From Gracilinanus agilis (taxonomy: Eukaryota): 64,000 nt of DNA. The position numbers were made by a program, and so were the translations under genes. Of this stretch, positions 2,584-53,587 are shown in pieces (positions within the stretch are counted from its first letter, which is position 1; every line of letters starts with the position of its first letter). The stretch covers positions 90,411,423 through 90,475,422 of the forward strand of contig NC_058132.1 of NCBI RefSeq assembly GCF_016433145.1, given 5' to 3'. The notes beneath the pieces are model-generated. The model ran no database searches. It was not told the origin of the DNA and saw nothing but the letters and a program-made list of their open reading frames with translations.

Positions 2584-3693
2584 ATGACATCCAACCACAC
2601 AACATCCCAATTGCCAGCCTTTCTCCTGCTTGGGATACCCTGGAGAGAAGATATCCACAAGTGGCTCTCTATTCCCTTCTTCTTCCTCTACCTTGCAGCT
2701 GCTCTAGGCAATGGTGCCATACTGGTGGCAGTGGCCCGGAATCCATCACTCCGTGAACCCATGCATTGTTTCCTCTCCATGCTTGCTGTCACTGACCTGG
2801 CATTATCAGGCACCACACTACCTACCACATTAGGCTTGTTGTGGTTTGGCATCAGCCAGGTGGCCTTTGATGTTTGCTTGACCCAAATGTTTTTCATCCA
2901 TGTTGCCTCAGTGGCAGAGTCATCAGTGCTCCTTGCCATGGCAGTAGACCGATGGGCTGCCATTGCCTGTCCACTGCGGTATTCTGCTCTCTTAACTCAC
3001 CGAGTGGTTGCAAAGGTAGGACTGGCTGTGTTGGTCCGTTCAGCTCTCACTTTGCTACCCCTGCCATTCTTGCTACTCAGGTTGACTTATAATGAACAAC
3101 GGAGGCTTACCCACTCTTTCTGCTTCCATCCAGATATCATGAAGCTGGCACGTAATGAAACTGAAGTCAATGTTCACTATGGTCTCTTTGTTATCTTGTC
3201 TACAGCTGGTATTGACTCAGTCCTCATTATTCTCTCCTATATGCCTATAGCAAAAGTAATTCTGGGCTTAGGGTCATGGGAAGAAAGAGTGCGAGCTGCA
3301 AGGACCTGTGTGAGTCATGTGGCGGCTGTCCTAGTGTTTTTTGTGCCCATGATTGGACTTTCAGTCATGCATCGTTTTGGGAGTCATGGTCCACTGCCAC
3401 TGGCCTTGGTAGCCTACACCTACCTCCTGGTGCCACCTGCTCTCAACCCTGTCATCTATAGTATCAAGTTTCAGTGCATCTGGAAGACTCTGCTCAGGCT
3501 CTGCTTCTACCAGCCTGGAGCCCCAAGGTGGGCAGCATCTCCACCTCCCACCCACACTGGACATAAATCTCTCTCAATTACATGCTCCCAGAGATACTCT
3601 GTTCAGATAATGCAAATGGAGTCCTCACAATTGGAGAATTCCCAGTCTGATGAAGGAGGAATCGGACTAGTCTTTGGGGATGATCAAGTATGA
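2584..3693 (+). CDS. Class I olfactory receptor, OR51-like, 369 aa, with extended C-terminus
   Basis: Intact ORF with OR motifs: N-terminal NHT sequon, FLLLGIP, GN, LREPMHCFLSML, ESSVLLAMAVDRWAAIACPLRY, SY, RAARTCVSH, HRFG, PPALNPVIYS. Intact-but-decaying pseudogene not excluded. Confidence 0.9.
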   Translation: MTSNHTTSQLPAFLLLGIPWREDIHKWLSIPFFFLYLAAALGNGAILVAVARNPSLREPMHCFLSMLAVTDLALSGTTLPTTLGLLWFGISQVAFDVCLTQMFFIHVASVAESSVLLAMAVDRWAAIACPLRYSALLTHRVVAKVGLAVLVRSALTLLPLPFLLLRLTYNEQRRLTHSFCFHPDIMKLARNETEVNVHYGLFVILSTAGIDSVLIILSYMPIAKVILGLGSWEERVRAARTCVSHVAAVLVFFVPMIGLSVMHRFGSHGPLPLALVAYTYLLVPPALNPVIYSIKFQCIWKTLLRLCFYQPGAPRWAASPPPTHTGHKSLSITCSQRYSVQIMQMESSQLENSQSDEGGIGLVFGDDQV

Positions 3694-9744: not shown

Positions 9745-10810
9745 GATTGCCACGTGTAGCTCTAGTGAGGATCTCCCTTCTTAAATCTCATTCCTTTTCT
9801 TTCAAGGTTCCTAGGGATTCAATTACAATATCTATGGAAGACACCCAGATATACTCCATGGATCTAAACTCCAGGTCTGCCTTACTACCTATCTATTATA
9901 CATCCCCACCACTTGGTGACATACTCAAACTAAACATGTTTAAAACATTATCTTTTCCTCCAAATGCTCTAACATCCTAATACCCCAATTTCTGTTAAGG
10001 ATATGACCATTATTCCAGATACCCAAGTTCCAGAACTAGGAACCCTAACTTTTCTCCTCTCTTTCTCCCCATCTCTAATATCCAATAAGATGTTGAATCT
10101 TGCTGATTCTACCTCTTTAATATCTCTTGCATTTCCCTGTTCTTTCTACTCATAACACAACCTCCTTACTTCCTGCTCCCATCACTCTCATCTAAAGTAC
10201 TCAATGAAATACTAGCCTCTTAATCGATCTCCCTTCTCCTTGTCTTTTCCCATTCTATTAAATATACCTGCAAATTGATATAATTAAAGTTCATCTGAAT
10301 ATGTTACTCCCCTCCTCAAGAAGCTTTAGTGTTTCCCTAATGCATCTAAGATAAAATACAAATTTCTTTGTTATATTTTAATCCTTTCAGAATCCATCTC
10401 CAGCCCCTCTCCAAGTCTGATTACACAATATTTCCCAGCACCTTTTCTGTGCTCCAGTTAAATGGATATACAGGTTGTTCTTCACATAGGAAAATACTAC
10501 TATTTCACTGTTATTGCAGACTATCGCTTATGCCTAGAATACTCTTCTCCTGTCTCTACCTCCAGAAACCTGTAGTTTATTTCAAAGCTCTATTCAAGTG
10601 GATCTCTTCCAATAGGTCTTTCCTGATAGTTCCAGATTTTGTACCTCTCACTCCCACATCACTTTGTATATGTTTGTTATATTTTCACTCAATTTTATTC
10701 ATTTTATCTTCTCATTGGAATGTAAGTTTCTTATTTTTTACTTCATATCCATAGCAACACTTAGCATGGAGCCTGGCATGTAATAAGCATTTAGTAAATG
10801 CTAATTCATT
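9745..10810 (+). mobile_element. L2 LINE fragment (ORF2 end + 3' tail), degenerate
   Basis: L2 landmarks ctcaaactaaacatgtttaaaac, aagatgttgaatcttgctgattctacctc and terminal gcctggcatgtaataagcatttagtaaatgct. Confidence 0.7.
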
Positions 10811-11731: not shown

Positions 11732-12697
11732 ATGATGTCTTTTCCCAAATCCCATGACAACAGTTCCTTCTTCCAACCATCAGCTTTCCTGCTAATTGGC
11801 ATCCCAGGCATGGAAGCTGTACATGGATGGATCTCCATCCCCTTCTGTTCCATGTATACTCTGGCTCTCACAGGCAACTGCCTGATCCTGCTAGCTGTGA
11901 AAAGAACTCCCAGCCTGCACCAGCCCATGTATTACTTCCTGTCCATGTTGTCCCTCACTGACTTGGGACTCACTTTGTGCACACTTCCCACCACCCTGGC
12001 TGTGCTCTGGTTTGACTATCGCCGCATAGCCTTTGATGCCTGCTTGACCCAGATGTTTTTCCTCCATTCTTTCTCTGTTGTGGAATCCTCAGTGCTGCTA
12101 GCCATGTCCTTTGACCGTTTTGTGGCCATCTCCAACCCACTGCGCTATGCCTCTGTCCTTACCAACAGTGTCATTGGCAGGATCGGAATGGCTATTGTGA
12201 CCCGTGCCACTGTTTCTCTCTTCCCTGTGCCTTTCCTGCTGAAGCGGCTAAACTTCTGCCCTGGGAAAGTCCGTCTTTCCCACTCATTTTGCTTTCATGC
12301 CGACATGATGAAGAGGGCCTGTGCTGATATCACTGTCAACATCCTATATGGGCTCTACGTAGTGCTGTCCACTGCAGTTGTGGATTCCTTACTAATTGCC
12401 CTTTCCTATGGACTCATATTACATACGGTAATGGGTTTAGCTTCTCCAAGAGAACGGGTTCGGGCCCTCAACACATGTGTTTCCCATATTTTAGCGGTTC
12501 TGGTCTTCTATATCCCAGTCATTGGAGTGTCCATTATCCACCGCTTTGGTAGACACGCACCTCCCATCGTGCATGCCCTTGTTGCCTATGTCTACTTGGT
12601 AGTGCCCCCTGTGCTCAATCCTATCATCTACAGTGTCAAGTCTAAGCACATCCGGGAGGCACTACTCAAGCTGCTAAGGAAGAAGGGACAAGGTTGA
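11732..12697 (+). CDS. Class I olfactory receptor, OR51 family (paralog A), 321 aa
   Basis: Intact ORF with canonical motifs: NSS sequon, FLLIGIPG, LHQPMYYFLSML, MSFDRFVAISNPLRY, three ECL2 cysteines, RALNTCVSH, HRFG, PPVLNPIIYSVK. Confidence 0.97.
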   Translation: MMSFPKSHDNSSFFQPSAFLLIGIPGMEAVHGWISIPFCSMYTLALTGNCLILLAVKRTPSLHQPMYYFLSMLSLTDLGLTLCTLPTTLAVLWFDYRRIAFDACLTQMFFLHSFSVVESSVLLAMSFDRFVAISNPLRYASVLTNSVIGRIGMAIVTRATVSLFPVPFLLKRLNFCPGKVRLSHSFCFHADMMKRACADITVNILYGLYVVLSTAVVDSLLIALSYGLILHTVMGLASPRERVRALNTCVSHILAVLVFYIPVIGVSIIHRFGRHAPPIVHALVAYVYLVVPPVLNPIIYSVKSKHIREALLKLLRKKGQG

Positions 12698-22320: not shown

Positions 22321-22680
22321 TCCTTATAGGATTGAGATGGGACCCAAGCCCTCAAAACTTCCTTGGATGATCTTCCAGGCACCTCTCACTGTACAATTTA
22401 TTGAAAACCATTTTGGATATTTTTTAAAATTCTATACTAGAACAGTTGTTAAGGAAATTAATTCAACATAATAAGTTCAAGATGTATAATACAGGAAGGT
22501 TGTTGACCAGGGTGAGTAGGCCACTTCTTAAAACCCAAATTTTGGTATCTTGGTCCTGAGGAACATGTCTAAAGTTGCTTCTGAATTCCTGATAAAAAAT
22601 TATAGACAATAATCCTGTCTTCTGTCTGAATCCGTGTATACAATAGGAGGTGGTCTCATCTTTTGAGAAACTATCTTTCA

Positions 22681-23646
22681 ATGATGTCCCTTCCCCAATT
22701 CCATGATAACAGTTCCTTCTTCCAACCATCTGTTTTCCTGCTGATTGGCATTCCAGGTTTGGAAGCTATGCACAGATGGATCTCGATCCCCTTTTCCTCT
22801 ATGTATACTCTGGCTCTCACAGGCAACTGCCTGATCCTGCTAGCTGTGAAAAGAACTCCCAGCCTGCACCAGCCCATGTATTACTTCCTGTCCATGTTGT
22901 CCCTCACTGACTTGGGACTCACTTTGTGCACACTTCCCACCACCCTGGCTGTGCTCTGGTTTGACTATCGCCGCATAGCCTTTGATGCCTGCTTGACCCA
23001 GATGTTTTTCCTCCATTCTTTCTCTGTTGTGGAATCCTCAGTGCTGCTAGCCATGTCCTTTGACCGTTTTGTGGCCATCTCCAACCCGCTGCGCTATGCC
23101 TCTGTCCTTACCAACAGTGTCATTGGCAGGATCGGAATGGCTATTGTGACCCGTGCCACTGTTTCTCTCTTCCCTGTGCCTTTCCTGCTGAAGCGGCTGA
23201 ACTTCTGCCCTGGAAAAGTCTATCTTTCCCACTCATTTTGCTTTCATGCCGACATGATGAAGAGGGCCTGTGCTGATATCACTGTCAACATCCTATATGG
23301 GCTCTATGTAGTGCTGTCCACTGCATTTGTGGATTCCTTACTAATTGCCATCTCCTATGGACTCATCCTTCACACAGTAATGGGATTAGCATCTCCTCAA
23401 GAACGGATCCGGGCTCTCAACACGTGTGTCTCCCATATTCTAGCTGTTCTAGTCTTTTATATCCCTGGTGTGGGAGTGTCCATTATCCACCGCTTTGGTA
23501 GACATGCACCCCCAATTGTGCATGCTGTTGTTGCCTATGTCTATTTGATTGTGCCCCCTGTGCTCAATCCTATCATCTACAGTGTCAAATCCAAGCACAT
23601 TCGAGAGGCACTGATCAAGATGTTAAAGAAGAAGGATCAGAGTTGA
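22681..23646 (+). CDS. Class I olfactory receptor, OR51 family (paralog B), 321 aa
   Basis: Intact ORF colinear with 11732-12697 (offset 10949); first ATG is at 22681, while the ORF-track start 22663 is a TTG. Confidence 0.97.
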   Translation: MMSLPQFHDNSSFFQPSVFLLIGIPGLEAMHRWISIPFSSMYTLALTGNCLILLAVKRTPSLHQPMYYFLSMLSLTDLGLTLCTLPTTLAVLWFDYRRIAFDACLTQMFFLHSFSVVESSVLLAMSFDRFVAISNPLRYASVLTNSVIGRIGMAIVTRATVSLFPVPFLLKRLNFCPGKVYLSHSFCFHADMMKRACADITVNILYGLYVVLSTAFVDSLLIAISYGLILHTVMGLASPQERIRALNTCVSHILAVLVFYIPGVGVSIIHRFGRHAPPIVHAVVAYVYLIVPPVLNPIIYSVKSKHIREALIKMLKKKDQS

Positions 23647-33654: not shown

Positions 33655-34782
33655 ATGGCAAGCCAGAGACAAGAACCCCAAAAGAGAAAGATCATCAAGA
33701 AGAAATCTATAACACTCAACAACTTTTACACAGATAAAATCCAGACAACAGAGCAAACAGCAGAGGAGAACAAACAAGTAATCATATCCAAATTTTCCCA
33801 AAAGAATGAAAACTGGCCAAAAGCTATTGAAGAGTTCAAATCTGAAATGATGAGAAAGATGGAAGAGATTTGGTGAGAGAAGTGGGAAATAGCTCAAAAG
33901 GAAATTAACAGGTTAGAAGACAGAAACTCCCAATTGTAGAAAGATGCCCAAAAATCAAACAAAATGGTAAACAAATTAGAAACCAAAATCTGGCAAGAAA
34001 ATAACAGTTTGAAAGGCAGAATTTCACAATTGGAAAGTGAGGCAAGTAAATTGAAGACCAGAAATGACCAGATTGAAAAGGAAAACCAAAAGATTATAGC
34101 CGAAAACAAGTCCCTAAAGGCTAGAATTGAGCAATTAGAAGCTAATGATCTCTCAAGACAGCAAGAACAAATAAAACAAAGTCAAAAGACTGATAAAATG
34201 AAAGGAAACATGAAATATCTCAATGAGAAAGTGACAGACCAAGAAAACAGGTCTAGAAGAGACAATCTAAGAATCACTGGTCTTCCTGAAAAAGCAGAAA
34301 TTAATAGAAATTTGGACTCCATACTAAAAGAAATTATTCAGCAAAATTGCCCTGAAGTTCTACAACAAGAGGGCAAATAGACATTGAAAAGATCCATAGA
34401 TCACCCTCTACACTAGATCCAGAAAAGACAACCCCCAGGAATATAATAGCCAAATTCAAGAGCTTCGAAGTAAAAAAATTTACAAGAAGCCATAAAGAGA
34501 CAATTCAGATTTCAAGGAGCACAAATCAGGATCACACAGGATCTTGCAGCCTCCATGCTAAAAGACCGCAAGGCTTAGAATATGATATTCAGAAAGGCAA
34601 GAGAACTGGGTCTACAACCAAGGATTACCTACCCATCAAAACTAACTATATACTTTTAGGGGAAAATTTGGGCATTCAACAAAATAGAAGATTTCCAAGT
34701 ATTTGCACAGAAAAGACCAGGACTAAATGGAAAGTTTGATATCTAACCACAAAAATCAAGAGAAACATGAAAAGGTAAATAA
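33655..34782 (+). pseudogene. L1 ORF1p, disrupted
   Basis: MASQRQEPQK..., coiled-coil heptads and ENRSRRDNLRITGLPE motif; in-frame stops (e.g. tga 33874-33876) and frameshifts. Confidence 0.92.
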
Positions 34783-35484
34783 GAAACAGAGGGGAAAGAA
34801 AGAAAACTCGTATTTTTAAAATTTGCCTCTTTAAGGGCTTCAATATGATCTAATTATTTGTATTCCTATGTGGAGAAATGTTATGTATAATTCTCTGTAA
34901 GGAACTCTATTCACTATTATAGTATTCACTATTATAGTAATTAGAAGAATTTTTCATAGGGAGAGGTTGGAATACTAAATGGTCTAAGATGATATGGGGG
35001 TGGGAAAGAAGGGGGTGAATAGTAGAGGACACCAAGAGAAACTTGAATGAATAAGAAAAATAAGATATTCTATTACACACAAAGAGGGCATGGGAAGGGG
35101 AAGGGATGAATACTATTATGAGAAGGAGAGGAAGAGAGCATTAAGAGGTAATATTTAAACCTTACTCTCAGTGTAATTAACCCTGAGAGGGAAGACTAGC
35201 TTTATCCATTGGGATATAAAACTCTATCTAAACCTACTGAGAAAGTCAGAAGGGATAAACCAAAGGGAGCAAGGGAGTGGGGGAGGGAGGTCAAAAAAGG
35301 GAGGGGAGAAGAAAAGGGAGGGAATTGATTAGGCCTTAAAAATAAAAAGAGGGGAATAATAAGGGAGGGGGTAGAAAGGGAAGTAAATCAAGGGAGGGGA
35401 CAAGGGTTACTGGCATAAAGCAAATCACTGGTTTAAAAGGAAATGGTGTAGGAAGAAGGGGTAGAACTAGGAGAGGATACCAAA

Positions 35485-38400
35485 ATGTTGGCAAATACAC
35501 AACTAATATTTATAACTCTGAATGTGAATGGGATGAACTCGCTCAAAAAACAGAAGCAAATAGCAGAGTGGATTAGAAACCAAAAATCCTACCACATGTT
35601 GTCTACAAGAAACACATATGAGGAGAGTGGACATATATAGGGTTAAGGTAAAGGGCTTAAGCAAAATCCTTTGGGCCTCAAATGAGAAAAAGAAGGAAGG
35701 AGTGGCAATTATGATTTCTGACAAAACCAAAGTCAAAATAGATATGATTTAAAAAGACAGGGAAGGTCATTACATCCTGATTAAAGGCAGTATAGACAAT
35801 GAGGAAATAAAATTGCTCAATATGTATGCACCAAATGGCATAGCAACAAGATTTATAAAGGAGAAACTGGCAGATCTCAAGAAGGAAATAGATAATAAAA
35901 CCATACTAGTGGGAGAGCTAAATATTCCTCTTTCAGATCTAGATAAATCAAACCAAAAAATAAATAAGAAAGAACTCAGAGAGATGAATGAAGTCCTAGA
36001 GAAATTAGATTTAATAGATATGTGGAGAAAAATAAATAGGGGCAAAAAGGAATACAACTTCTTTTCAGCTGCACATGGCACATTCACAAAGATTGACCAT
36101 ATAATAGGGCATAGAAACATTGCAAACAAATGCAAAAGAGCAGAAATAATAAATGTAACCTTCTCAGATCATAATGCAATAAAAATAATAATTAGTAAAG
36201 GCACCTGGACAGGAAAATCAAAAACTAATTGGAAATTAAATAATATGATTCTCCAAAATCAGCTAGTCAAAGAAGAAATCATAGAAACAATCAACAATTT
36301 CATTGAAGAGAATGACAATGATAAGACATCCTACCAAACTCTTTGGGATGCAGCTAAGTCAGTACTCAGGGGAAATTTATATCCTTGAGTGCATATATTA
36401 ACAAATTAAGGGGAGCAGAGATTAATGAATTGGGCATGCAACTTAAAAAATTAGAAAGAGAACAAATTAAAATCCCCAGATGAAAACTAAATTAGAAATA
36501 CTAAAAATCAAGGGAGAAATTAATAAACTCGAAAGTAAAAGAACTATTGAATTAATAAATAAGACTAGAAGCTGGTATTTTGAAAAAACAGATAAAATAG
36601 ACAAAGTACTGGTCAATCTAATAAAAAAATGAAAGAAGAAAACTAAATTGACAGTATCAAAGATGAAAAGGGAGACCTCACCTCTAATGAAGAGGAAATT
36701 AAGGCAATCATTAAAAACTATTTTGCCCAATTATATTGCAATAAATATAGTAATCTAGGAGATATGGATGAATATTTACAAAAATACAAATTGCCTAGAT
36801 TAACAGCAGAAGAAGTATAATACCTAAATAATCCCATATCAGAAAAAGAAATTGAACAAGCCATCAAAGAACTCCCTAAGAAAAAATCGCCAGGGCCTGA
36901 TACATTCACAAGTGAATTCTATCAGACATTCAAAGAGCAATTAATCCCAATACTATACAAATTATTTGATATAATAAGCAAAGAAGGAGTCCTACCAAAT
37001 TCCTTTTATGACACAAATATGGTACTGATTCCAAAGCCAGGGAGATCAAAAACAGAGAAAGAAAACTACAGACCAATCTCCCTAATGAACATAGATGCAA
37101 AAATCTTAAATAGAATACTAGGAAAGAGACTCCTGCAAGTGATCAAGAGGATCATCCACCATGAACAGGGGGGATTTATACCAGGAATGCAAGGATGGTT
37201 CAACATTAGCAAAACCATCCACATAATTAACCATATCAACAATCTAACAAACAAAAATCACATGAATAATTATACATGCTGAAAAAGCCTTTGACAAAAT
37301 ACAGCACCGATTCCTATTGAAAACCCTGGAAAGTATAGGAATAGAAGGACCTTTCCTAAAAATAATATACAGTATATACCTAAAAACCATCAACAAGCAT
37401 CATATGCAATGGGGATAAATTAGAAGCCTTTCCAATAAGATCAGGAGTGAAACAAGGATGCCCATTATCACCTCTATTATTTAACACTGTACTAGAAACA
37501 CTAGCAGAAGCAATTAGAGAAGAAAAAGAAATTGAAGCATCAAAATAGGCAATGAGGAGACTAAGCTATCACTCTTTACAGATGATATGATGGTCTACTT
37601 AAAAAATCCTAGAGAATCAACTAAGAAGCTTGTAGAAATAATCAACAACTTTAGCAAAGTTGCAGGATACGAAATAAATGCACATAAATCATCAGCATTT
37701 CTATATATTTCCAAAACATCACAGCAGCAAGAGGTAGAAAGAGAAACACCATTTAAAATCACCCAAGACAATATAAAATACTTGGGAATCTATCTACCAA
37801 AACAAACACATGAATTATACGAAAACAACTACAAAACACTTTCCAAACAATTAAAACTAGATCTAAACAATTTGAAAAACATTGATTGCTCATGGGTAAG
37901 ATGAGCTAACATAATAAAAATGACCATTCTACCCAAATTAATTTACCTATTTAGTGCCATACCTATCAAGCTACCAAAAAACTTTTTTACTGAATTAGGA
38001 AAAGCTATAACAAAGTTCATTTGGAATAACAAAAGATCAAGAATATCAAGGGAAATAATGAAAAAAATGTGAAGGAAGGGGGCCTAGCAGTACCAGATAT
38101 TAAACTATACTATAAAGCAGCAGTCATCAAAACGGTATGATACTGGCTAAGAGACAGAAGGGAGGATCAGTGGAATAAACTTGGGGTAAGTGACATCAGC
38201 AAGACAGTGTATGATAAGTCCAAAGAGCCCAACTTTTGGGACATGAATCCACTATTTGACAAAAACTGCTGGGAAATTTGGAAAACAATATGGAAGAGAT
38301 TAGGTTTAGATCAACATCTCACACCCTACACCAAGATAAATTCAGAATGGATGAATGACTTGAATATAAAGGAATATAAAGAGGGAAACTATAAATAAGT

Positions 38401-39276
38401 CAAGTGAACATAGAATAGTTTACTTTTCAGATCTCTGGGAAAGGAAAGCTTAAAACCAAGCAAGAGTTAGAGAAAATTACAAACTGTAAAATAAATAATT
38501 TTGATTATATCAAACTAAAAAGCTTTTGTACAAACACAATGTAGTCAAAATCAGAAGGGAAATAACAAATTGGGAAAAAATCTTTATAACAAAAAACTCT
38601 GACAGGGGTCTAATTACTCAAATATACAAGGAGTTAAATCAATTGTATAAAAAATAAAGCCATTCCCCAATTGATAAATGGGCAAGAGACATGAATAGAC
38701 AATTTTCAGATAGAGAAATCAAAAGTATCAATAAGCACATGAAAAAGTGTTCTAAATCTCTAATAATTAGAGAAATGCAAATCAAAACAACTCTGAGGTA
38801 TCACCTCACACCTAGCAGATTGGCTAAAATGAAAGAAGGGGAGAGTAATGAATGCTGGGGGGGATGTTGCAAAACTGGGACATTAATGCATTGCTGGTGG
38901 AGTTGTGAACTGATCATTCTGGCTGGCAATTTGGAACTATGCTCAAAGGGCTATAAAAGAATTCCTGCCCTTTGGTCCAGCCATACCATTGTTGAGTTTG
39001 TACCCCAAAGAGATCATAGATAAACAGACTTGTATGAAAATATTTATAGTCATGCTTTTTGTGGTGGTAAAAAACTGGAAAATGAGGGTATGTCCTTCAA
39101 TTGGGGAATGGCTGAACAAACTGTGGTATATGCTGGTGATGGAATACTATTGTGCTCAAAGGAATAATAAACTGGAGGAATTCCACGTTAACTGGAAAGA
39201 CCTCCAGGAACTGATGCAGAGTGAAAGGAGCAGAGCCAAAAGAACATTGTACTCAGAGACTGATAAACTGTGGTAA
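35485..39276 (+). pseudogene. L1 ORF2p (endonuclease/reverse transcriptase), disrupted
   Basis: ITLNVNG start, YAPN, SDH (EN); [27 protein letters not shown] (RT); Cys-rich C-terminus; broken into many short ORFs. Confidence 0.95.
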
Positions 39277-39637
39277 AATCGAATGTAATGGACTTCTGTA
39301 CTAGGAGCAATGCAATGACCCAGGACAATTCTGAGGGACTTATGGAAAAGAACACTACCCACATTCAGAGGAAGAACTACAGAAGTAGAAACAAAAGAAA
39401 AACAACTGCTTGAACACATGGGTTGAGCCGGACATGATTGGGGATGTAGACTTGAAACTACCACACCAATGCAACTGACAACAATTTGGAAATAAGTCTT
39501 GATCAATGGCACATCTTAAAACCAGGGGAAATATGCATCAGCCAAGGGGGTGAAGGGGAAAGTAAGAGCATGAATTATGTAACCATATTAACTTTTCTAA
39601 AAAATAAATATTAATAAATGTTTAAAAAAAAAGATTG

Positions 39638-40353
39638 TTGGAATTATGTCCAAAGAGCGATAAAAGAATGCCTGCCCTTTGATTCAGCCTTACCATTGCT
39701 GGGATTGTACCCCAAAGAGATCATAGATAAACAGACTTGCACAAAAATATTTATAGCTGCACTCTTTGTGGTGGCAAAAAACTGGAAAGCAAGGGTATGC
39801 CCTTCAATTGGGGAATGGCTGAACAAATTGTGGTATATGTTGGTGATGGAATACTATTGTGCTCAAAGGAATAATAAACTGGAGGAATTCCATGTGAACT
39901 GGAATGACCTCCAGGAATTGATGCAGAGTGAAAGGAGCAGAGCCAGAAGAACATTGTACACAGAGACTGATATATTGTGGTAAAATCGAATGTAATGTAC
40001 GTCTGTACTAGCAGCAATGCAATGACCCAGGACAATTCTGAGGGATTTATGGAAAGGAACACTACCCACATTCAGAGGAAGAACAACAGGAGTAGAAACA
40101 CAGAAGAAAAACAACTGCTTGGACACTTGGGTGGATGAGGACATGATTGGGGATGTAGACCTGAAAAGACCACACCCGTGTAACTATCAATAATGTGTAA
40201 ATAAGTCTTGACTGACTACACATAATAAAACCAGTGGAAATGCGAATTAGCTACAGTGGAGAGGGGCGGGGGGTTCAGGGGGTGAAAGGGGGCGTAAAAA
40301 CATGACTTACGTAACCATGGAAAATTTTTCTAAAAATAAAAAATTATATATTC
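39638..40353 (+). mobile_element. Second, 5'-truncated L1 inserted into the poly-A tail of the full-length L1
   Basis: ORF 39618-39983 repeats the ORF2 C-terminus; TSD aaaaaaaagattg at 39625-39637 and 40354-40366. Confidence 0.93.
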
Positions 40354-51625: not shown

Positions 51626-52639
51626 TAGACTTTGATAGTCCTTTTCCCAATCCCCAGTCTTTTCAGATGGATTTTTTCCCTCTCCTTGTGTTTCTAGGAG
51701 GAGAGAAAGCCTAAAACCAGACCACAGGGTGTGTGTATTTAGTCAAAGATATGAAAAGTTAGGTATCCAGATGACATACAAACTCCAAAATGCCTTTCCA
51801 AGGACAAATCATTCCCCATCTCATTTCTAATTCAATGTACCCTTTTTTTTAATGTCTCCTGAAATTTCCCAGCTCCATTAGAATGAAAGTATCTCTACTC
51901 AGTCATACTATGAAAATATTAAACTGAGTCTCAGAGAGCAGGAAATGTGCTTTAAGCAAATAAAAGACCTTTAAGATAAATAGTCCCTTAGGAAAACTCC
52001 TTGTAGCTGAGAGTACAGACATCAAAAGTCTAATCTTTCCATAGCTAGTGACTCATTATAACGCTACCAACACCCACAAATTGACTTATTATTTTAGATA
52101 TATTTAACCAGTACAGTGTGAGTGTTTTTGGACAAGTCATTTAATCACACTGGGCCTCAATTGGGCCATCAATTAAATGAGGAATGATACCCGATCCTTG
52201 CTTGATTTACTCCTCAGGGACCATGAGGAGTAAATGTCTAAAGTTGTTTTAACTTAGAATTCTGATAAACTAAATGGAAAAGCACTTTGGACAGATGATA
52301 TGCCAATAGAAGTATGAGGCACTTGTGGAAAGAGCTATGGTTGTAAAGTCATAGGACTTCCATCTTCAGTACTAGTACCTGTATGACCCTAGAAAAGTCA
52401 CCTTAGCTCTCTAGGTCTCAGTTAATTATCTCTAAAAGAAATTAATTGTGCTACATGGCTTCTTAGATCCTTTCTACATTTAAATTTTGTAGTATCTTTA
52501 TTTCCTTGTATGTAATATGTGGGGAATATACTAAATGATATCTAAGAACTTAACATTTTAAAATCCTAGATCTATGAAATATCTCTAATTGTTATTTTTA
52601 GGTTCTCCTGGTTTCTTTCTATTCAAAGGGACAAAGACC

Positions 52640-53587
52640 ATGTATGCCATGTCTACCCACAACCACACTCACTCTGGTGTGCTGACCTTCCTCCTTCCCA
52701 GCCTCCCAGGGCCAGGGGGCTCAGGATTCCTCACCATCCTTGGTTTGACCTATAGCACCACCCTTCTGGGAAATGGTCTGATCCTCCTCACCATCTGTGC
52801 TAACACCTACCTGCACCAACCTCAGTTCTTGCTACTGGCTCTGTTGGCCACTACAGACCTTGGTCTGGCCCTTTCTATGCTGCCCACCATTCTGGATGCT
52901 CTGTGGTTCCCAGCCCCTATTATCTCTAGGGATGTATGCCTCCTCCAAATGTGCTGCCTTTATGCCATCTCCACCGGGCAGTCCTCCGTGCTGCTGGCCA
53001 TGGCCTTGGACCGTTGGCTAGCTGTGTGTCACCCTCTCTACTATGTGGCCTTCCTTACCCCCAACCGCCTTGCCTGGACCAGCCTGGCTTTCATTCTCCG
53101 GGCCACCATCCCTCTGTTGCCCACACCCTTGCTGATACCATCCTGCAATGCTCATAATCTCTCCCTCCCTTTCTGCTTCCCAACAGAAGTGCTGAAGCTA
53201 TCCTGTGGAGGACTAGGGTGGACCTATCCAGTTGTGACTATGCTTACTACAGCCACTATGGATATAGTCCTCATTACCATCTCCTATAGTCTGGTCCTCC
53301 GGGAAGTGATGCAGAGGATATCTCCTGCTGGGCAGCACAAAGCCCTGAGAACATGCACTGCCCACCTCTGTGCCCTCCTTGTTTTTTATGGACCTCTTTT
53401 TGCTTCAGTCCTATTCCCTGACTCACTTCCAGGAAGCTTTGCCTCTCTTGGTCTTCTTGCATCCCCTGCCCTCCATCCCCTTGTCTATGGGATACAATCT
53501 CACCGGCTCCGGCGTGGCCTGCTTGGTGTCCTTGGTTGCCCCTCGACTTCAAGGATTGCTCCCAACCTAAAGAGGCCACGTCCCTAA
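52640..53587 (+). CDS. Highly divergent class I-type olfactory receptor (315 aa from ATG 52640; 312 aa from ATG 52649)
   Basis: Uninterrupted ORF with NHT sequon, GN, LHQP, TM2 D, TM3 C, SSVLLAMALDRWLAVCHPLYY, three ECL2 cysteines, SY, KALRTCTAHL, FYGP, PALHPLVYG; the ORF-track start 52589 is a TTG. Confidence 0.85.
   Translation: MYAMSTHNHTHSGVLTFLLPSLPGPGGSGFLTILGLTYSTTLLGNGLILLTICANTYLHQPQFLLLALLATTDLGLALSMLPTILDALWFPAPIISRDVCLLQMCCLYAISTGQSSVLLAMALDRWLAVCHPLYYVAFLTPNRLAWTSLAFILRATIPLLPTPLLIPSCNAHNLSLPFCFPTEVLKLSCGGLGWTYPVVTMLTTATMDIVLITISYSLVLREVMQRISPAGQHKALRTCTAHLCALLVFYGPLFASVLFPDSLPGSFASLGLLASPALHPLVYGIQSHRLRRGLLGVLGCPSTSRIAPNLKRPRP

What the first reader, a model, noticed from the sequence alone, without database searches (positions are those of the whole stretch)
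52640..53587. Intact but radically remodelled class I odorant receptor: extracellular face rebuilt, signalling face preserved
Seen, by alignment to paralog A: four separate in-frame deletions (2 aa before TM1, 3 aa at TM4/ECL2, 2 aa at ECL2/TM5, 7 aa in ECL3) are all extracellular, while every intracellular and TM interval has identical length; there is no frameshift or stop. All four extracellular Cys, MAxDRxxAxCxPL, SY, KALxTC and FY are kept. The HRFG motif is gone, the ECL2 CxH(Q) motif is CFPT, TM3 FxH is CLY, PMY is PQF and ESS is QSS. Established: in OR51E2 the HRFG Arg (R262, 6x59) anchors the ligand carboxylate and is a class I hallmark. Inference: four frame-preserving deletions with no disruption argue for purifying selection, so this may be a class I-derived receptor for a non-carboxylate ligand or with a non-olfactory role. 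It stands alone, 29 kb from the nearest OR in the window. I do not recognise an ortholog.
Basis: partly seen in the sequence, partly recalled or inferred. Interest (0 to 1): 0.8.

Follow-up and report, generated by a model that had tools for sequence, protein, structure and literature searches.

The report
Marsupial-only remodelled class I odorant receptor
This is an intact smell-receptor-type gene whose outer, ligand-binding half was rebuilt before the living marsupials diverged and has been kept by selection in all 12 marsupials found, so it is a working receptor, but its ligand and tissue are unknown.

Summary
Window 52640-53587 (+) is an open 315-aa class I odorant-receptor ORF. The conserved start is 52649, giving 312 aa.

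It is not a lucky open pseudogene. Gap-free 312-aa orthologs occur in 12 marsupial species of five orders. All share the deletions, and flanking DNA is colinear in the three species I could compare. Pairwise dN/dS is 0.25-0.40 (pN<pS, P 1e-8 to 6e-11). There are no CDS indels where about 20 are expected from the flanks. No protein outside marsupials is a close full-length relative: about 40% identity at most, in an exhaustive search.

In trees the clade sits in, or next to, family OR51. Its stem is 2.3-3.0 changes per site and its crown only about 0.1-0.2, which means a burst of change followed by a freeze.

The OR-specific activation core is kept: R3.50-H6.40-Y5.58, R4.52-D5.50, S3.40 and FY6.47-48. 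The carboxylate anchor R6.59 is deleted and ECL3 is cut to about 6 aa.

Most likely this is a Gs/Golf-coupled chemoreceptor for a non-carboxylate ligand. RNA-run evidence hints at expression in commonly sampled tissues, but the tissues are unidentified. Public annotation names it only automatically ("OR51M1-like", "OR51L1-like").

The parts
52649..53587 (+). Coding sequence from the conserved start (312 aa plus stop). It is a single coding exon encoding a seven-helix odorant-receptor-type GPCR.
   Evidence: The identical 312-aa product is annotated for the window's own species (P0250). Orthologs all start at this Met. AlphaFold2 gives pLDDT 87.8 and pTM 0.86 with seven helices plus H8. The top Foldseek hits are consOR51, OR52c and OR51E2 at TM 0.81-0.82.
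52640..52648 (+). Lineage-specific in-frame upstream ATG (adds M-Y-A). It was created by a 9-bp deletion relative to Sarcophilus and Dromiciops and is probably not the functional start.
   Evidence: Three-species flank alignment. The 315-aa form is not in the protein collection, but the 312-aa form is.
52590..52601 (+). T-rich tract and AG splice acceptor. The exon would begin at 52602, making 52602-52648 the 5' UTR part of the coding exon.
   Evidence: Read directly from the sequence. The tract, an AG (shifted by 1 nt in Sarcophilus) and the downstream 45 nt are conserved in Sarcophilus and Dromiciops. Splicing itself was not observed.
52718..52723 (+). Junction of deletion 1 (2 aa, N-terminus/TM1 boundary, between G27 and S28).
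   Evidence: A1 alignment; the gap is shared by all orthologs.
53141..53146 (+). Junction of deletion 2 (3 aa, TM4/ECL2, between S168 and C169).
   Evidence: The R3.50-to-Y5.58 spacing is 91 here against 96-97 in 229 of 243 other ORs.
53210..53215 (+). Junction of deletion 3 (2 aa, ECL2/TM5, between G191 and L192).
53414..53419 (+). Junction of deletion 4 (7 aa, ECL3, between F259 and P260). It removes the HRFG motif, including the carboxylate-anchoring R6.59, and leaves an ECL3 of about 6 residues (259-264).
   Evidence: The role of R262(6.59) is taken from 10.1101/2022.12.20.520951.
53474..53488 (+). HPLVY in place of NPxxY (N7.49H), invariant in all 12 species.
   Evidence: N occupies this column in 96% of 83 other ORs.
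53534..53584 (+). C-terminal tail after helix 8 (GCPST.R.AP..K.P). It is about 10 aa longer than in canonical class I relatives, and the G-C and several other positions are conserved.
   Evidence: A1 alignment. Only 2 of 17 columns are invariant, so constraint here is weak (omega 0.4-0.65).

Best explanation
This is a functional, single-copy odorant-receptor-type GPCR of class I, OR51-affiliated, and apparently restricted to marsupials.

Before the crown marsupial radiation its lineage changed very fast. The outer, ligand-binding half was rebuilt by four in-frame deletions: ECL3 was cut to about 6 residues, the carboxylate anchor R6.59 was lost, and H3.33 became Y, L4.60 became T and the ECL2 lid H-Q became P-T. 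Since then the new form has been held by purifying selection on both its outer and inner halves.

It keeps the residues that OR51E2 uses to turn ligand binding into Gs activation. These are the class I-specific R4.52-D5.50 pair, S3.40, the F6.47-Y6.48 pivot, and the R3.50-H6.40-Y5.58 network. It also keeps the N-terminal glycosylation sequon and both extracellular disulfides. It therefore most likely still signals through Golf/Gs to cAMP.

The ligand is probably a small molecule that is not anchored as a carboxylate in the canonical class I way, and its specificity has probably been stable across marsupials.

Shown: the gene is intact, orthologous, under selection and of the expected fold; the residue replacements are real; and there was a rate burst on the stem. 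Inferred: G-protein coupling and ligand class. Unknown: tissue.

The confidence of 0.6 is for the whole statement. I would put about 0.95 on 'functional, selected, marsupial-wide, class I-derived' and about 0.6 on 'non-carboxylate ligand with retained Gs/Golf coupling'.
For: Orthology:
- 12 species carry it: two didelphids, Dromiciops, a bilby, three dasyurids and five diprotodonts. All proteins are 312 aa (wallaby 328), gap-free against each other, and 80-97% identical. 176 of 312 columns are invariant.
- The gene tree matches the species tree.
- Flanks are colinear across the window, Sarcophilus and Dromiciops.
- No other gene is called within 10 kb in any of 8 species.

Selection:
- NG86 omega is 0.25-0.32 and ML omega 0.34-0.40.
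- Fisher tests of pN<pS give P 1e-8 to 6e-11.
- The CDS is 85-93% identical with 0 indels. The flanks are 65-79% identical with 0.0216 indel events per bp, so about 20 are expected and P(0) is 1.5e-9.
- Omega is 0.25-0.34 for the outer half and 0.24-0.30 for the inner half.

Isolation and burst:
- An exhaustive phmmer search of 1.84e9 representatives finds only the marsupial cluster as a close full-length relative. All other full-length hits are about 40% identical or less; 42-48% occurs only on short partial proteins.
- The stem is 2.26-2.95 changes per site against a crown of about 0.1-0.2. The OR51I2 neighbour shows about 0.3 over the whole marsupial-eutherian path.

Core kept: N45, D73, S115, D124-R125, R154, D208, Y216, H242, F249-Y250, P280 and Y283 are invariant in all 12. 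Their roles are described in 10.1101/2022.12.20.520951.

Pocket equivalents Y108, L159, T162, P181, T182 and S256 are invariant in the clade.

The structure model is confident, including the short ECL3.
Against: - No ligand, coupling or expression data exist for this gene.
- N7.49H, E3.39Q and PMY-to-PQF alter near-universal OR residues in the core. They could change coupling, trafficking or basal activity.
- 29% of human class I ORs also lack R6.59, so loss of the Arg alone does not prove a new ligand class.
- Crown-group constraint is ordinary for an OR. It is weaker than that of the OR51I2-like neighbour, which is 90-94% identical across the same species against 84-87% here.
- DNA for dN/dS was available for only three species.
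- Placement inside OR51 is not secure. An AU test does not reject a position just outside the sampled OR51s (p 0.29).
- Pocket mapping rests on sequence alignment in loops that carry indels.
Confidence: 0.6

Rival explanations
1. Same receptor, but its main job is outside the nose. It would be an 'ectopic' chemosensor in an internal tissue, as OR51E2/Olfr78 is in prostate, kidney and carotid body, sensing an endogenous or dietary metabolite. This rival is about site of action and is compatible with the molecular mechanism above.
For: -: 17 runs labelled RNA(?) from 10 studies of a close relative hold the gene. Shares reach 0.25, where that species' DNA runs hold 0.27 (full cover at that divergence). 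Ten of the runs are small transcriptome assemblies of 56-336 M letters.
- the canonical OR51I2-like neighbour is held only by 6 large runs from 3 studies.
- The gene is single-copy, in strict 1:1 orthology and isolated, with no gene within 10 kb in 8 species.
- From my own knowledge, not tested here: conserved single-copy ORs are over-represented among ectopically expressed ORs.
Against: - The run types are guessed ('RNA?') and the tissues and species are coded.
- The relative's DNA runs were not listed for the control, so the control's sensitivity is unknown.
- The read-laying run was lost to a filter, so neither coverage shape nor splicing was seen.
- No Logan-derived copy of any of the ortholog proteins is on record.
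- Testis and deep libraries transcribe many ORs without function.
Confidence: 0.3
2. A receptor that no longer needs a ligand. The 7-aa ECL3 deletion ties the outer ends of TM6 and TM7 together, and with N7.49H and E3.39Q this locks a constitutively active (or permanently silent) state. The protein would then be used for basal cAMP tone, axon targeting or as a partner or chaperone.
For: - In OR51E2, inward movement of ECL3/TM6 alone is sufficient for activation, as in the constitutively active Q181D mutant (10.1101/2022.12.20.520951).
- Here ECL3 is about 6 residues and is modelled with confidence, pLDDT 84-87. That paper reports low confidence for ECL3 in human ORs.
- The core polar network is altered at 3.39 and 7.49 in all species.
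Against: - The outer TM halves and pocket-equivalent residues are as constrained as the inner halves (omega 0.16-0.28 for the outer TM halves; invariant Y108, L159, T162, P181, T182 and S256). This is what a conserved binding site predicts.
- Both disulfides and the glycosylation sequon are kept.
- No activity data exist.
Confidence: 0.08
3. Origin rival: this is not a marsupial invention. It would be the highly diverged ortholog of a known therian class I gene at the same position beside OR51I2, or an old amniote lineage lost elsewhere.
For: - The gene sits directly after an OR51I-like trio in the class I cluster.
- The OR51 polytomy includes frog, reptile and bird sequences, so the stem may be old.
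- The AU test allows a position outside the sampled OR51s.
Against: - No eutherian, monotreme, sauropsid or amphibian protein exceeds about 40% identity over full length in an exhaustive search.
- Pseudogenes and synteny beyond the window could not be examined with these tools.
Confidence: 0.3
4. A pseudogene that happens to remain open.
For: None beyond the loss of several canonical OR motifs.
Against: - It is intact and gap-free in 12 species.
- About 20 indels per pair are expected at the flank rate and none is seen (P 1.5e-9).
- Substitutions alone at flank-like divergence (25%) leave the frame open with P 0.009.
- pN is significantly below pS.
Confidence: 0.005

Closest known systems
Human OR51E2 and consensus OR51 (solved class I odorant receptors, PDB 8f76 and 8uxv)
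   Same: - Same fold: Foldseek TM 0.81-0.82.
- Best sequence matches among solved structures, at E 1e-53 and 1.4e-41.
- Same class I-specific R4.52-D5.50 pair, S3.40, FY6.47-48 and R3.50-H6.40-Y5.58 network.
- Same ECL2 disulfides, and TM and intracellular segments of the same length.
   Different: - Only 31-36% identical.
- R6.59 (HRFG) is deleted and ECL3 is 7 aa shorter.
- ECL2 is 5 aa shorter in total. The lid residues H180 and Q181 become P and T.
- H3.33 becomes Y and L4.60 becomes T.
- E3.39 becomes Q, N7.49 becomes H, and PMY becomes PQF.
- The C-tail is longer.
OR51I2-like genes in the same window (11732-12697 and 22663-23646)
   Same: Same cluster, same strand and same single-exon layout. 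Both are OR51-affiliated.
   Different: - The neighbours are canonical and have eutherian orthologs at 80-85% identity. The focal gene has none above about 40%.
- The focal stem branch is 2.3-3.0 changes per site, against about 0.3 for the whole therian OR51I2 path.
OR37 subfamily of mammalian class II ORs (recalled from memory, not tested here)
   Same: A small OR group defined by a length change in ECL3, and unusually conserved by purifying selection across species.
   Different: OR37 has a 6-aa insertion in ECL3, is class II, and is present across mammals. This gene has a 7-aa deletion, is class I, is a single gene, and is found only in marsupials.

Membership tests
Vertebrate odorant receptors (Pfam 7tm_4, PF13853) | Profile match above the curated cut-off over the seven-helix domain | tested here: met
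   175.6 bits against a cut-off of 27, covering residues 36-294.
Class I odorant receptors | Closer to class I than to class II in sequence and in a tree | tested here: met
   consOR51, OR52c and OR51E2 score E 1e-53 to 1e-41, against 1e-27 or weaker for class II consensus ORs. With a class II outgroup the gene falls inside class I.
Class I odorant receptors | Intramembrane R4.52-D5.50 ion pair (88% and 82% of human class I ORs, about 0% of class II; 10.1101/2022.12.20.520951) | tested here: met
   R154 and D208 are invariant in all 12 orthologs.
Class I odorant receptors | Arg at 6.59 (carboxylate anchor, 71% of human class I ORs) | tested here: not met
   The HRFG segment is deleted in all 12. 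The didelphid TM6-ECL3-TM7 stretch, residues 252-280, has no basic residue; Dromiciops has a Lys in ECL3.
Class I odorant receptors | Aliphatic residues at 4.57 and 4.60 (more than 80% of class I ORs) | tested here: inconclusive
   4.57 is L159, so that position is met. 4.60 is T162, so that position is not met. Both are invariant. The mapping is by sequence alignment only.
OR family 51 (nomenclature rule recalled from memory: at least 40% identity within a family) | At least 40% amino-acid identity to family members | tested here: not met
   The best full-length identities are 35-38% and one 300-aa partial protein reaches 40%. Values of 42-48% occur only on short partial proteins.
OR family 51 | Phylogenetic nesting within OR51 | tested here: inconclusive
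   The maximum-likelihood trees put the clade inside OR51 plus kin, with support 100/99 and 100/100 for the enclosing clade. The AU test does not reject a position just outside the sampled OR51s (p 0.29). The stem is very long.
Signalling-competent OR (OR51E2 activation model) | R3.50-H6.40-Y5.58 network and the FYGx pivot | tested here: met
   R125, H242, Y216 and F249-Y250-G-P are invariant. Their roles are described in the paper.
Class A GPCR core motifs | NPxxY in TM7 | tested here: not met
   HPLVY in all 12 species. N is present in 96% of 83 other ORs.
Ectopically expressed ORs (OR51E2-like physiology) | mRNA in a defined non-olfactory tissue | tested here: inconclusive
   Many RNA-labelled runs of a relative hold the gene and fewer hold a canonical neighbour.
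Functional gene (not a pseudogene) | Open frame conserved among orthologs, with dN/dS below 1 | tested here: met

The most novel reading that the evidence does not exclude
A marsupial-specific receptor family born from a class I odorant receptor and re-tooled for a new job. It would have a new ligand class, an altered TM7/TM3 polar core (HPxxY, Q3.39), and its main expression outside the olfactory epithelium. That would make it a lineage-restricted internal or reproductive chemosensor rather than a smell receptor.
Probability: 0.25. Interest if true: 0.72.

Novelty: new variant of a known kind. Interest (0 to 1): 0.5.

Why it matters
Solved class I odorant receptors, and in the OR51E2 authors' reading most of the class, work through a carboxylate anchor at 6.59 and a mobile ECL3. 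Here evolution has removed both while keeping the OR-specific transduction core, and then preserved the result in every marsupial order sampled.

That makes it a ready test of two questions. First, can an OR be activated without the ECL3/R6.59 mechanism? Second, what can the class I scaffold bind when rebuilt?

It is also a clean case of a rate burst followed by a freeze, which is the pattern expected for a change of function, in a gene family usually described as evolving by birth and death.

If it is expressed outside the nose, it would be a marsupial-only signalling receptor of unknown physiology. Public annotation currently hides it under similarity-based names ('OR51M1-like', 'OR51L1-like').

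Tried and rejected
- **DNA of orthologs.** Only Sarcophilus and Dromiciops could be fetched. The other six assemblies were too large, so codon analysis is pairwise on three species and no branch or site models were run.
- **Literature.** No paper in the library mentions these proteins by accession or describes a marsupial-specific divergent class I OR. That library lacks most subscription journals, so this is not proof of absence.
- **Other genes in the 29-kb gap and downstream.** I looked for OR relics, globins and RNAs. I found only L1 debris, no further OR-like segment and no Rfam family.
- **ESM Atlas look-alikes.** These returned only generic OR clusters.
- **Earlier scan notes.** Nothing on this gene.
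- **Pseudogene reading.** Rejected on the indel, stop-codon and dN/dS evidence.
- **Location inside an intron of a larger gene.** This could have explained RNA coverage, but no overlapping gene is called in 8 species.
- **Naming the OR at 2584.** I ran no further search on this, because it would not change the verdict.
Full report
**What is there**

Window 52640-53587 (+) is an uninterrupted ORF of 315 codons. It matches the odorant-receptor profile 7tm_4 at E 2.5e-51. Among solved structures it is closest in sequence to the class I receptors consOR51 (E 1e-53), OR52c and OR51E2. Class II consensus receptors follow far behind.

- 2 aa at the N-terminus/TM1 boundary
- 3 aa at TM4/ECL2
- 2 aa at ECL2/TM5
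- 7 aa in ECL3

No gap falls in any helix or intracellular loop. All listed motif retentions and losses are present.

Two things were missed. The TM7 NPxxY motif reads HPLVY, and the C-terminal tail is about 10 residues longer than in relatives.

The first ATG (52640) is a local accident. The window lacks 9 bp that Sarcophilus and Dromiciops have just upstream, and the conserved start is 52649. That gives the 312-aa product annotated for this genome and for every ortholog.

A T-rich tract and an AG at 52590-52601 form a splice acceptor. The 45 nt between it and the start are conserved in the three species compared, which is the usual OR layout of upstream non-coding exon(s) plus one coding exon. 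Splicing itself was not observed.

**Is it more than a lucky open frame?**

Yes. A word-indexed search of 5.8 billion proteins found eight clusters at 83-97% identity, all marsupial. Cluster look-up raised this to 12 species:
- the window's own species
- *Monodelphis domestica*
- *Dromiciops gliroides*
- *Macrotis lagotis*
- *Sarcophilus harrisii*, *Antechinus flavipes* and *Sminthopsis crassicaudata*
- *Vombatus ursinus* and *Phascolarctos cinereus*
- *Trichosurus vulpecula*, *Petaurus breviceps* and *Notamacropus eugenii*

All proteins are 312 aa; the wallaby has 16 extra C-terminal residues. All align without a single internal gap and all carry the four deletions. Pairwise identity is at least 80.4%, and 176 of 312 columns are invariant.

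The gene tree within the clade reproduces the accepted marsupial species tree. The flanking 8-10 kb is colinear between the window, Sarcophilus and Dromiciops at 65-79% identity. In eight species no other gene is called within 10 kb. This is one-to-one positional orthology.

DNA was obtainable for three species:

| Measure | Result |
|---|---|
| Pairwise dN/dS, NG86 | 0.25-0.32 |
| Pairwise dN/dS, ML | 0.34-0.40 |
| Fisher test, pN < pS | P 1e-8 to 6e-11 |
| Identity, CDS vs flanks | 85-93% vs 65-79% |
| Indel events in flanks | 0.0216 per aligned bp |
| Indels in the 939-bp CDS | 0 seen, about 20 expected per pair, P 1.5e-9 |

Substitutions alone at flank-like divergence would leave the frame open in under 1% of simulations.

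Constraint acts on both halves of the protein. Omega is 0.25-0.34 for the extracellular loops plus outer TM halves, and 0.24-0.30 for the inner half.

This constraint is ordinary for an OR, not exceptional. The OR51I2-like neighbour is 90-94% identical across the same species and 80-85% identical to eutherian OR51I2.

**Where it comes from**

An exhaustive HMMER scan of 1.84 billion cluster representatives finds the marsupial cluster and then nothing above about 40% identity over the full length. The nearest named proteins are a mix of OR51 members (51E1-, 51G2-, 51L1-, 51Q1- and 51B2-like) and OR52 members, from frog to human.

Two mixture-model ML trees place the clade (support 100/100) inside the OR51 assemblage (100/99 and 100/100). 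Its stem is 2.26 or 2.95 changes per site, and its crown only about 0.1-0.2 deep. On the same tree the whole marsupial-to-eutherian path of OR51I2 is about 0.3.

At its own crown rate the stem would need more time than vertebrates have existed. This uses my recollection of about 80 My for the marsupial crown and about 160 My for the therian split. The lineage therefore passed through a rate burst, several-fold to about 30-fold depending on when the stem began, and then froze.

An AU test does not reject a position just outside the sampled OR51s (p 0.29). 'In or beside OR51' is the honest placement. By the usual 40% rule (recalled from memory) it would not qualify as an OR51 member.

Pseudogene relics and synteny outside marsupials could not be searched with these tools. 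Whether the gene arose in the marsupial stem or is an old lineage lost elsewhere stays open.

**What was changed and what was kept**

Among 60 alignment columns that are at least 75% conserved in 83 other ORs, the clade keeps 46 and has fixed a different residue at 14. The 14 are G21S, M62Q, Y63F, F65L, F105C, E114Q (3.39), Y126W, V127L, I129V, H176L, I219V, S241A, Y271G and N279H (7.49).

I mapped the OR51E2 propionate site through the HMMER alignment (residue roles from 10.1101/2022.12.20.520951):

| OR51E2 residue | Equivalent here |
|---|---|
| H104 (3.33) | Y108 |
| F155 (4.57) | L159 |
| L158 (4.60) | T162 |
| H180 | P181 |
| Q181 | T182 |
| G198 (5.39) | P/L/A/T197 |
| I202 (5.43) | M/I/L201 |
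| S258 (6.55) | S256 |
| R262 (6.59) | deleted |

Except for the two TM5 positions, these replacements are invariant in all 12 species. TM5 is the most variable helix, with 9 of 32 columns invariant.

The following are kept without exception:
- N1.50, D2.50 and D3.49-R3.50
- the class I-specific R4.52-D5.50 pair, and S3.40
- Y5.58 and H6.40
- F6.47-Y6.48-G-P
- P7.50 and Y7.53
- the NxT sequon and the four extracellular cysteines

AlphaFold2 with a 92-sequence alignment gives a confident seven-helix model (pLDDT 87.8, pTM 0.86). ECL3 is only about 6 residues and is itself modelled at pLDDT 84-87. The nearest solved folds are consOR51, OR52c and OR51E2 (TM 0.81-0.82).

The shortened TM6-TM7 spacing is rare.

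**How it most likely works**

In OR51E2 the agonist carboxylate grips R6.59. That pulls ECL3 and the outer end of TM6 inward, and TM6 pivots on FYGx to open the Gs site. The active state is stabilised by the OR-specific R3.50-H6.40-Y5.58 contact.

This receptor has the pivot, the connector and the coupling network, but it lacks the grip and most of the loop. I therefore read it as a still-signalling Golf/Gs-coupled receptor whose binding site has been rebuilt for a ligand that is not held as a carboxylate in the canonical way. The invariance of the new pocket residues implies a stable specificity across marsupials.

The TM7 change may be tolerable because Y7.53 mutation had only a modest effect in OR51E2. 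This is inference.

A minority alternative is that the short ECL3 fixes TM6 in one state, making the protein constitutively active or ligand-independent. The equal constraint on the outer half argues against that but does not exclude it.

**Expression**

This is the weakest part of the evidence. Seventeen runs labelled RNA(?) from ten studies of a close relative hold the gene. Their shares reach 0.25 of sampled words, where that species' DNA runs hold 0.27. Ten of these runs are small transcriptome assemblies.

The same search with the OR51I2-like neighbour returns only six large runs from three studies. This suggests a genuine mRNA in commonly sampled tissues, and it is the only lead toward a non-olfactory role.

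There are several limits. Library types are guessed and tissues are hidden. The control's sensitivity is uncertain.

**Known or new**

The gene is annotated in public genomes, but only by automatic similarity names ('olfactory receptor 51M1-like', '51L1-like'). I found no paper that mentions these proteins or such a lineage, within the limits of the library. The scan's earlier notes hold nothing on it.

I class it as a new variant of a known kind. It is an odorant-receptor-family GPCR with a conserved, atypical architecture and a lineage-restricted distribution.

**Surroundings**

The window holds three canonical class I genes upstream: 2584-3693, and the OR51I2-like pair at 11732-12697 and 22663-23646. 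A degraded L1 lies at about 33.9-40 kb. There are no further OR-like segments, Pfam-recognisable genes or Rfam RNAs.

A shared contig length of 683,521,856 bp links the window's own protein to a *Gracilinanus agilis* record. The window is therefore probably from that species.

Noticed in passing
window 2584-3693 (+): A class I OR ORF of 369 aa, about 50 residues longer at the C-terminus than its relatives. It groups with the OR51I2-like pair in both trees on a long branch.
   Followed up: no
window 11732-12697 and 22663-23646 (+): A tandem OR51I2-like pair, 93% identical as proteins. They are very conserved: 90-94% identity to Australidelphian orthologs and 80-85% to eutherian OR51I2. I did not test that.
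   Followed up: partly
window about 33964-40000 (+): A degraded L1 element with pieces of an ORF1-like coiled coil, an endonuclease and a reverse transcriptase. It has a strong A-rich skew and accounts for part of the 29-kb gap between ORs.
   Followed up: partly
window 52631-52648; L001 and L003 about 9975-10000: A 9-bp deletion in the window's lineage creates an extra in-frame ATG at 52640. All three species also have an out-of-frame ATG 5 nt before the conserved start.
   Followed up: partly
residue 239 of the focal protein (window 53354-53356): The OR motif KAxxTC reads KALRTC in the two didelphids and KALRTF in all ten Australidelphians. This is a clean lineage split.
   Followed up: no
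P0008 (Notamacropus eugenii ortholog): It has a 16-aa C-terminal extension (328 aa) compared with the 312 aa of all other orthologs.
   Followed up: no
whole window: The contig length of 683,521,856 bp is shared by the window's own protein record and a Gracilinanus agilis protein, which suggests the source species. The window also contains 139 N, which I left untouched.
   Followed up: no
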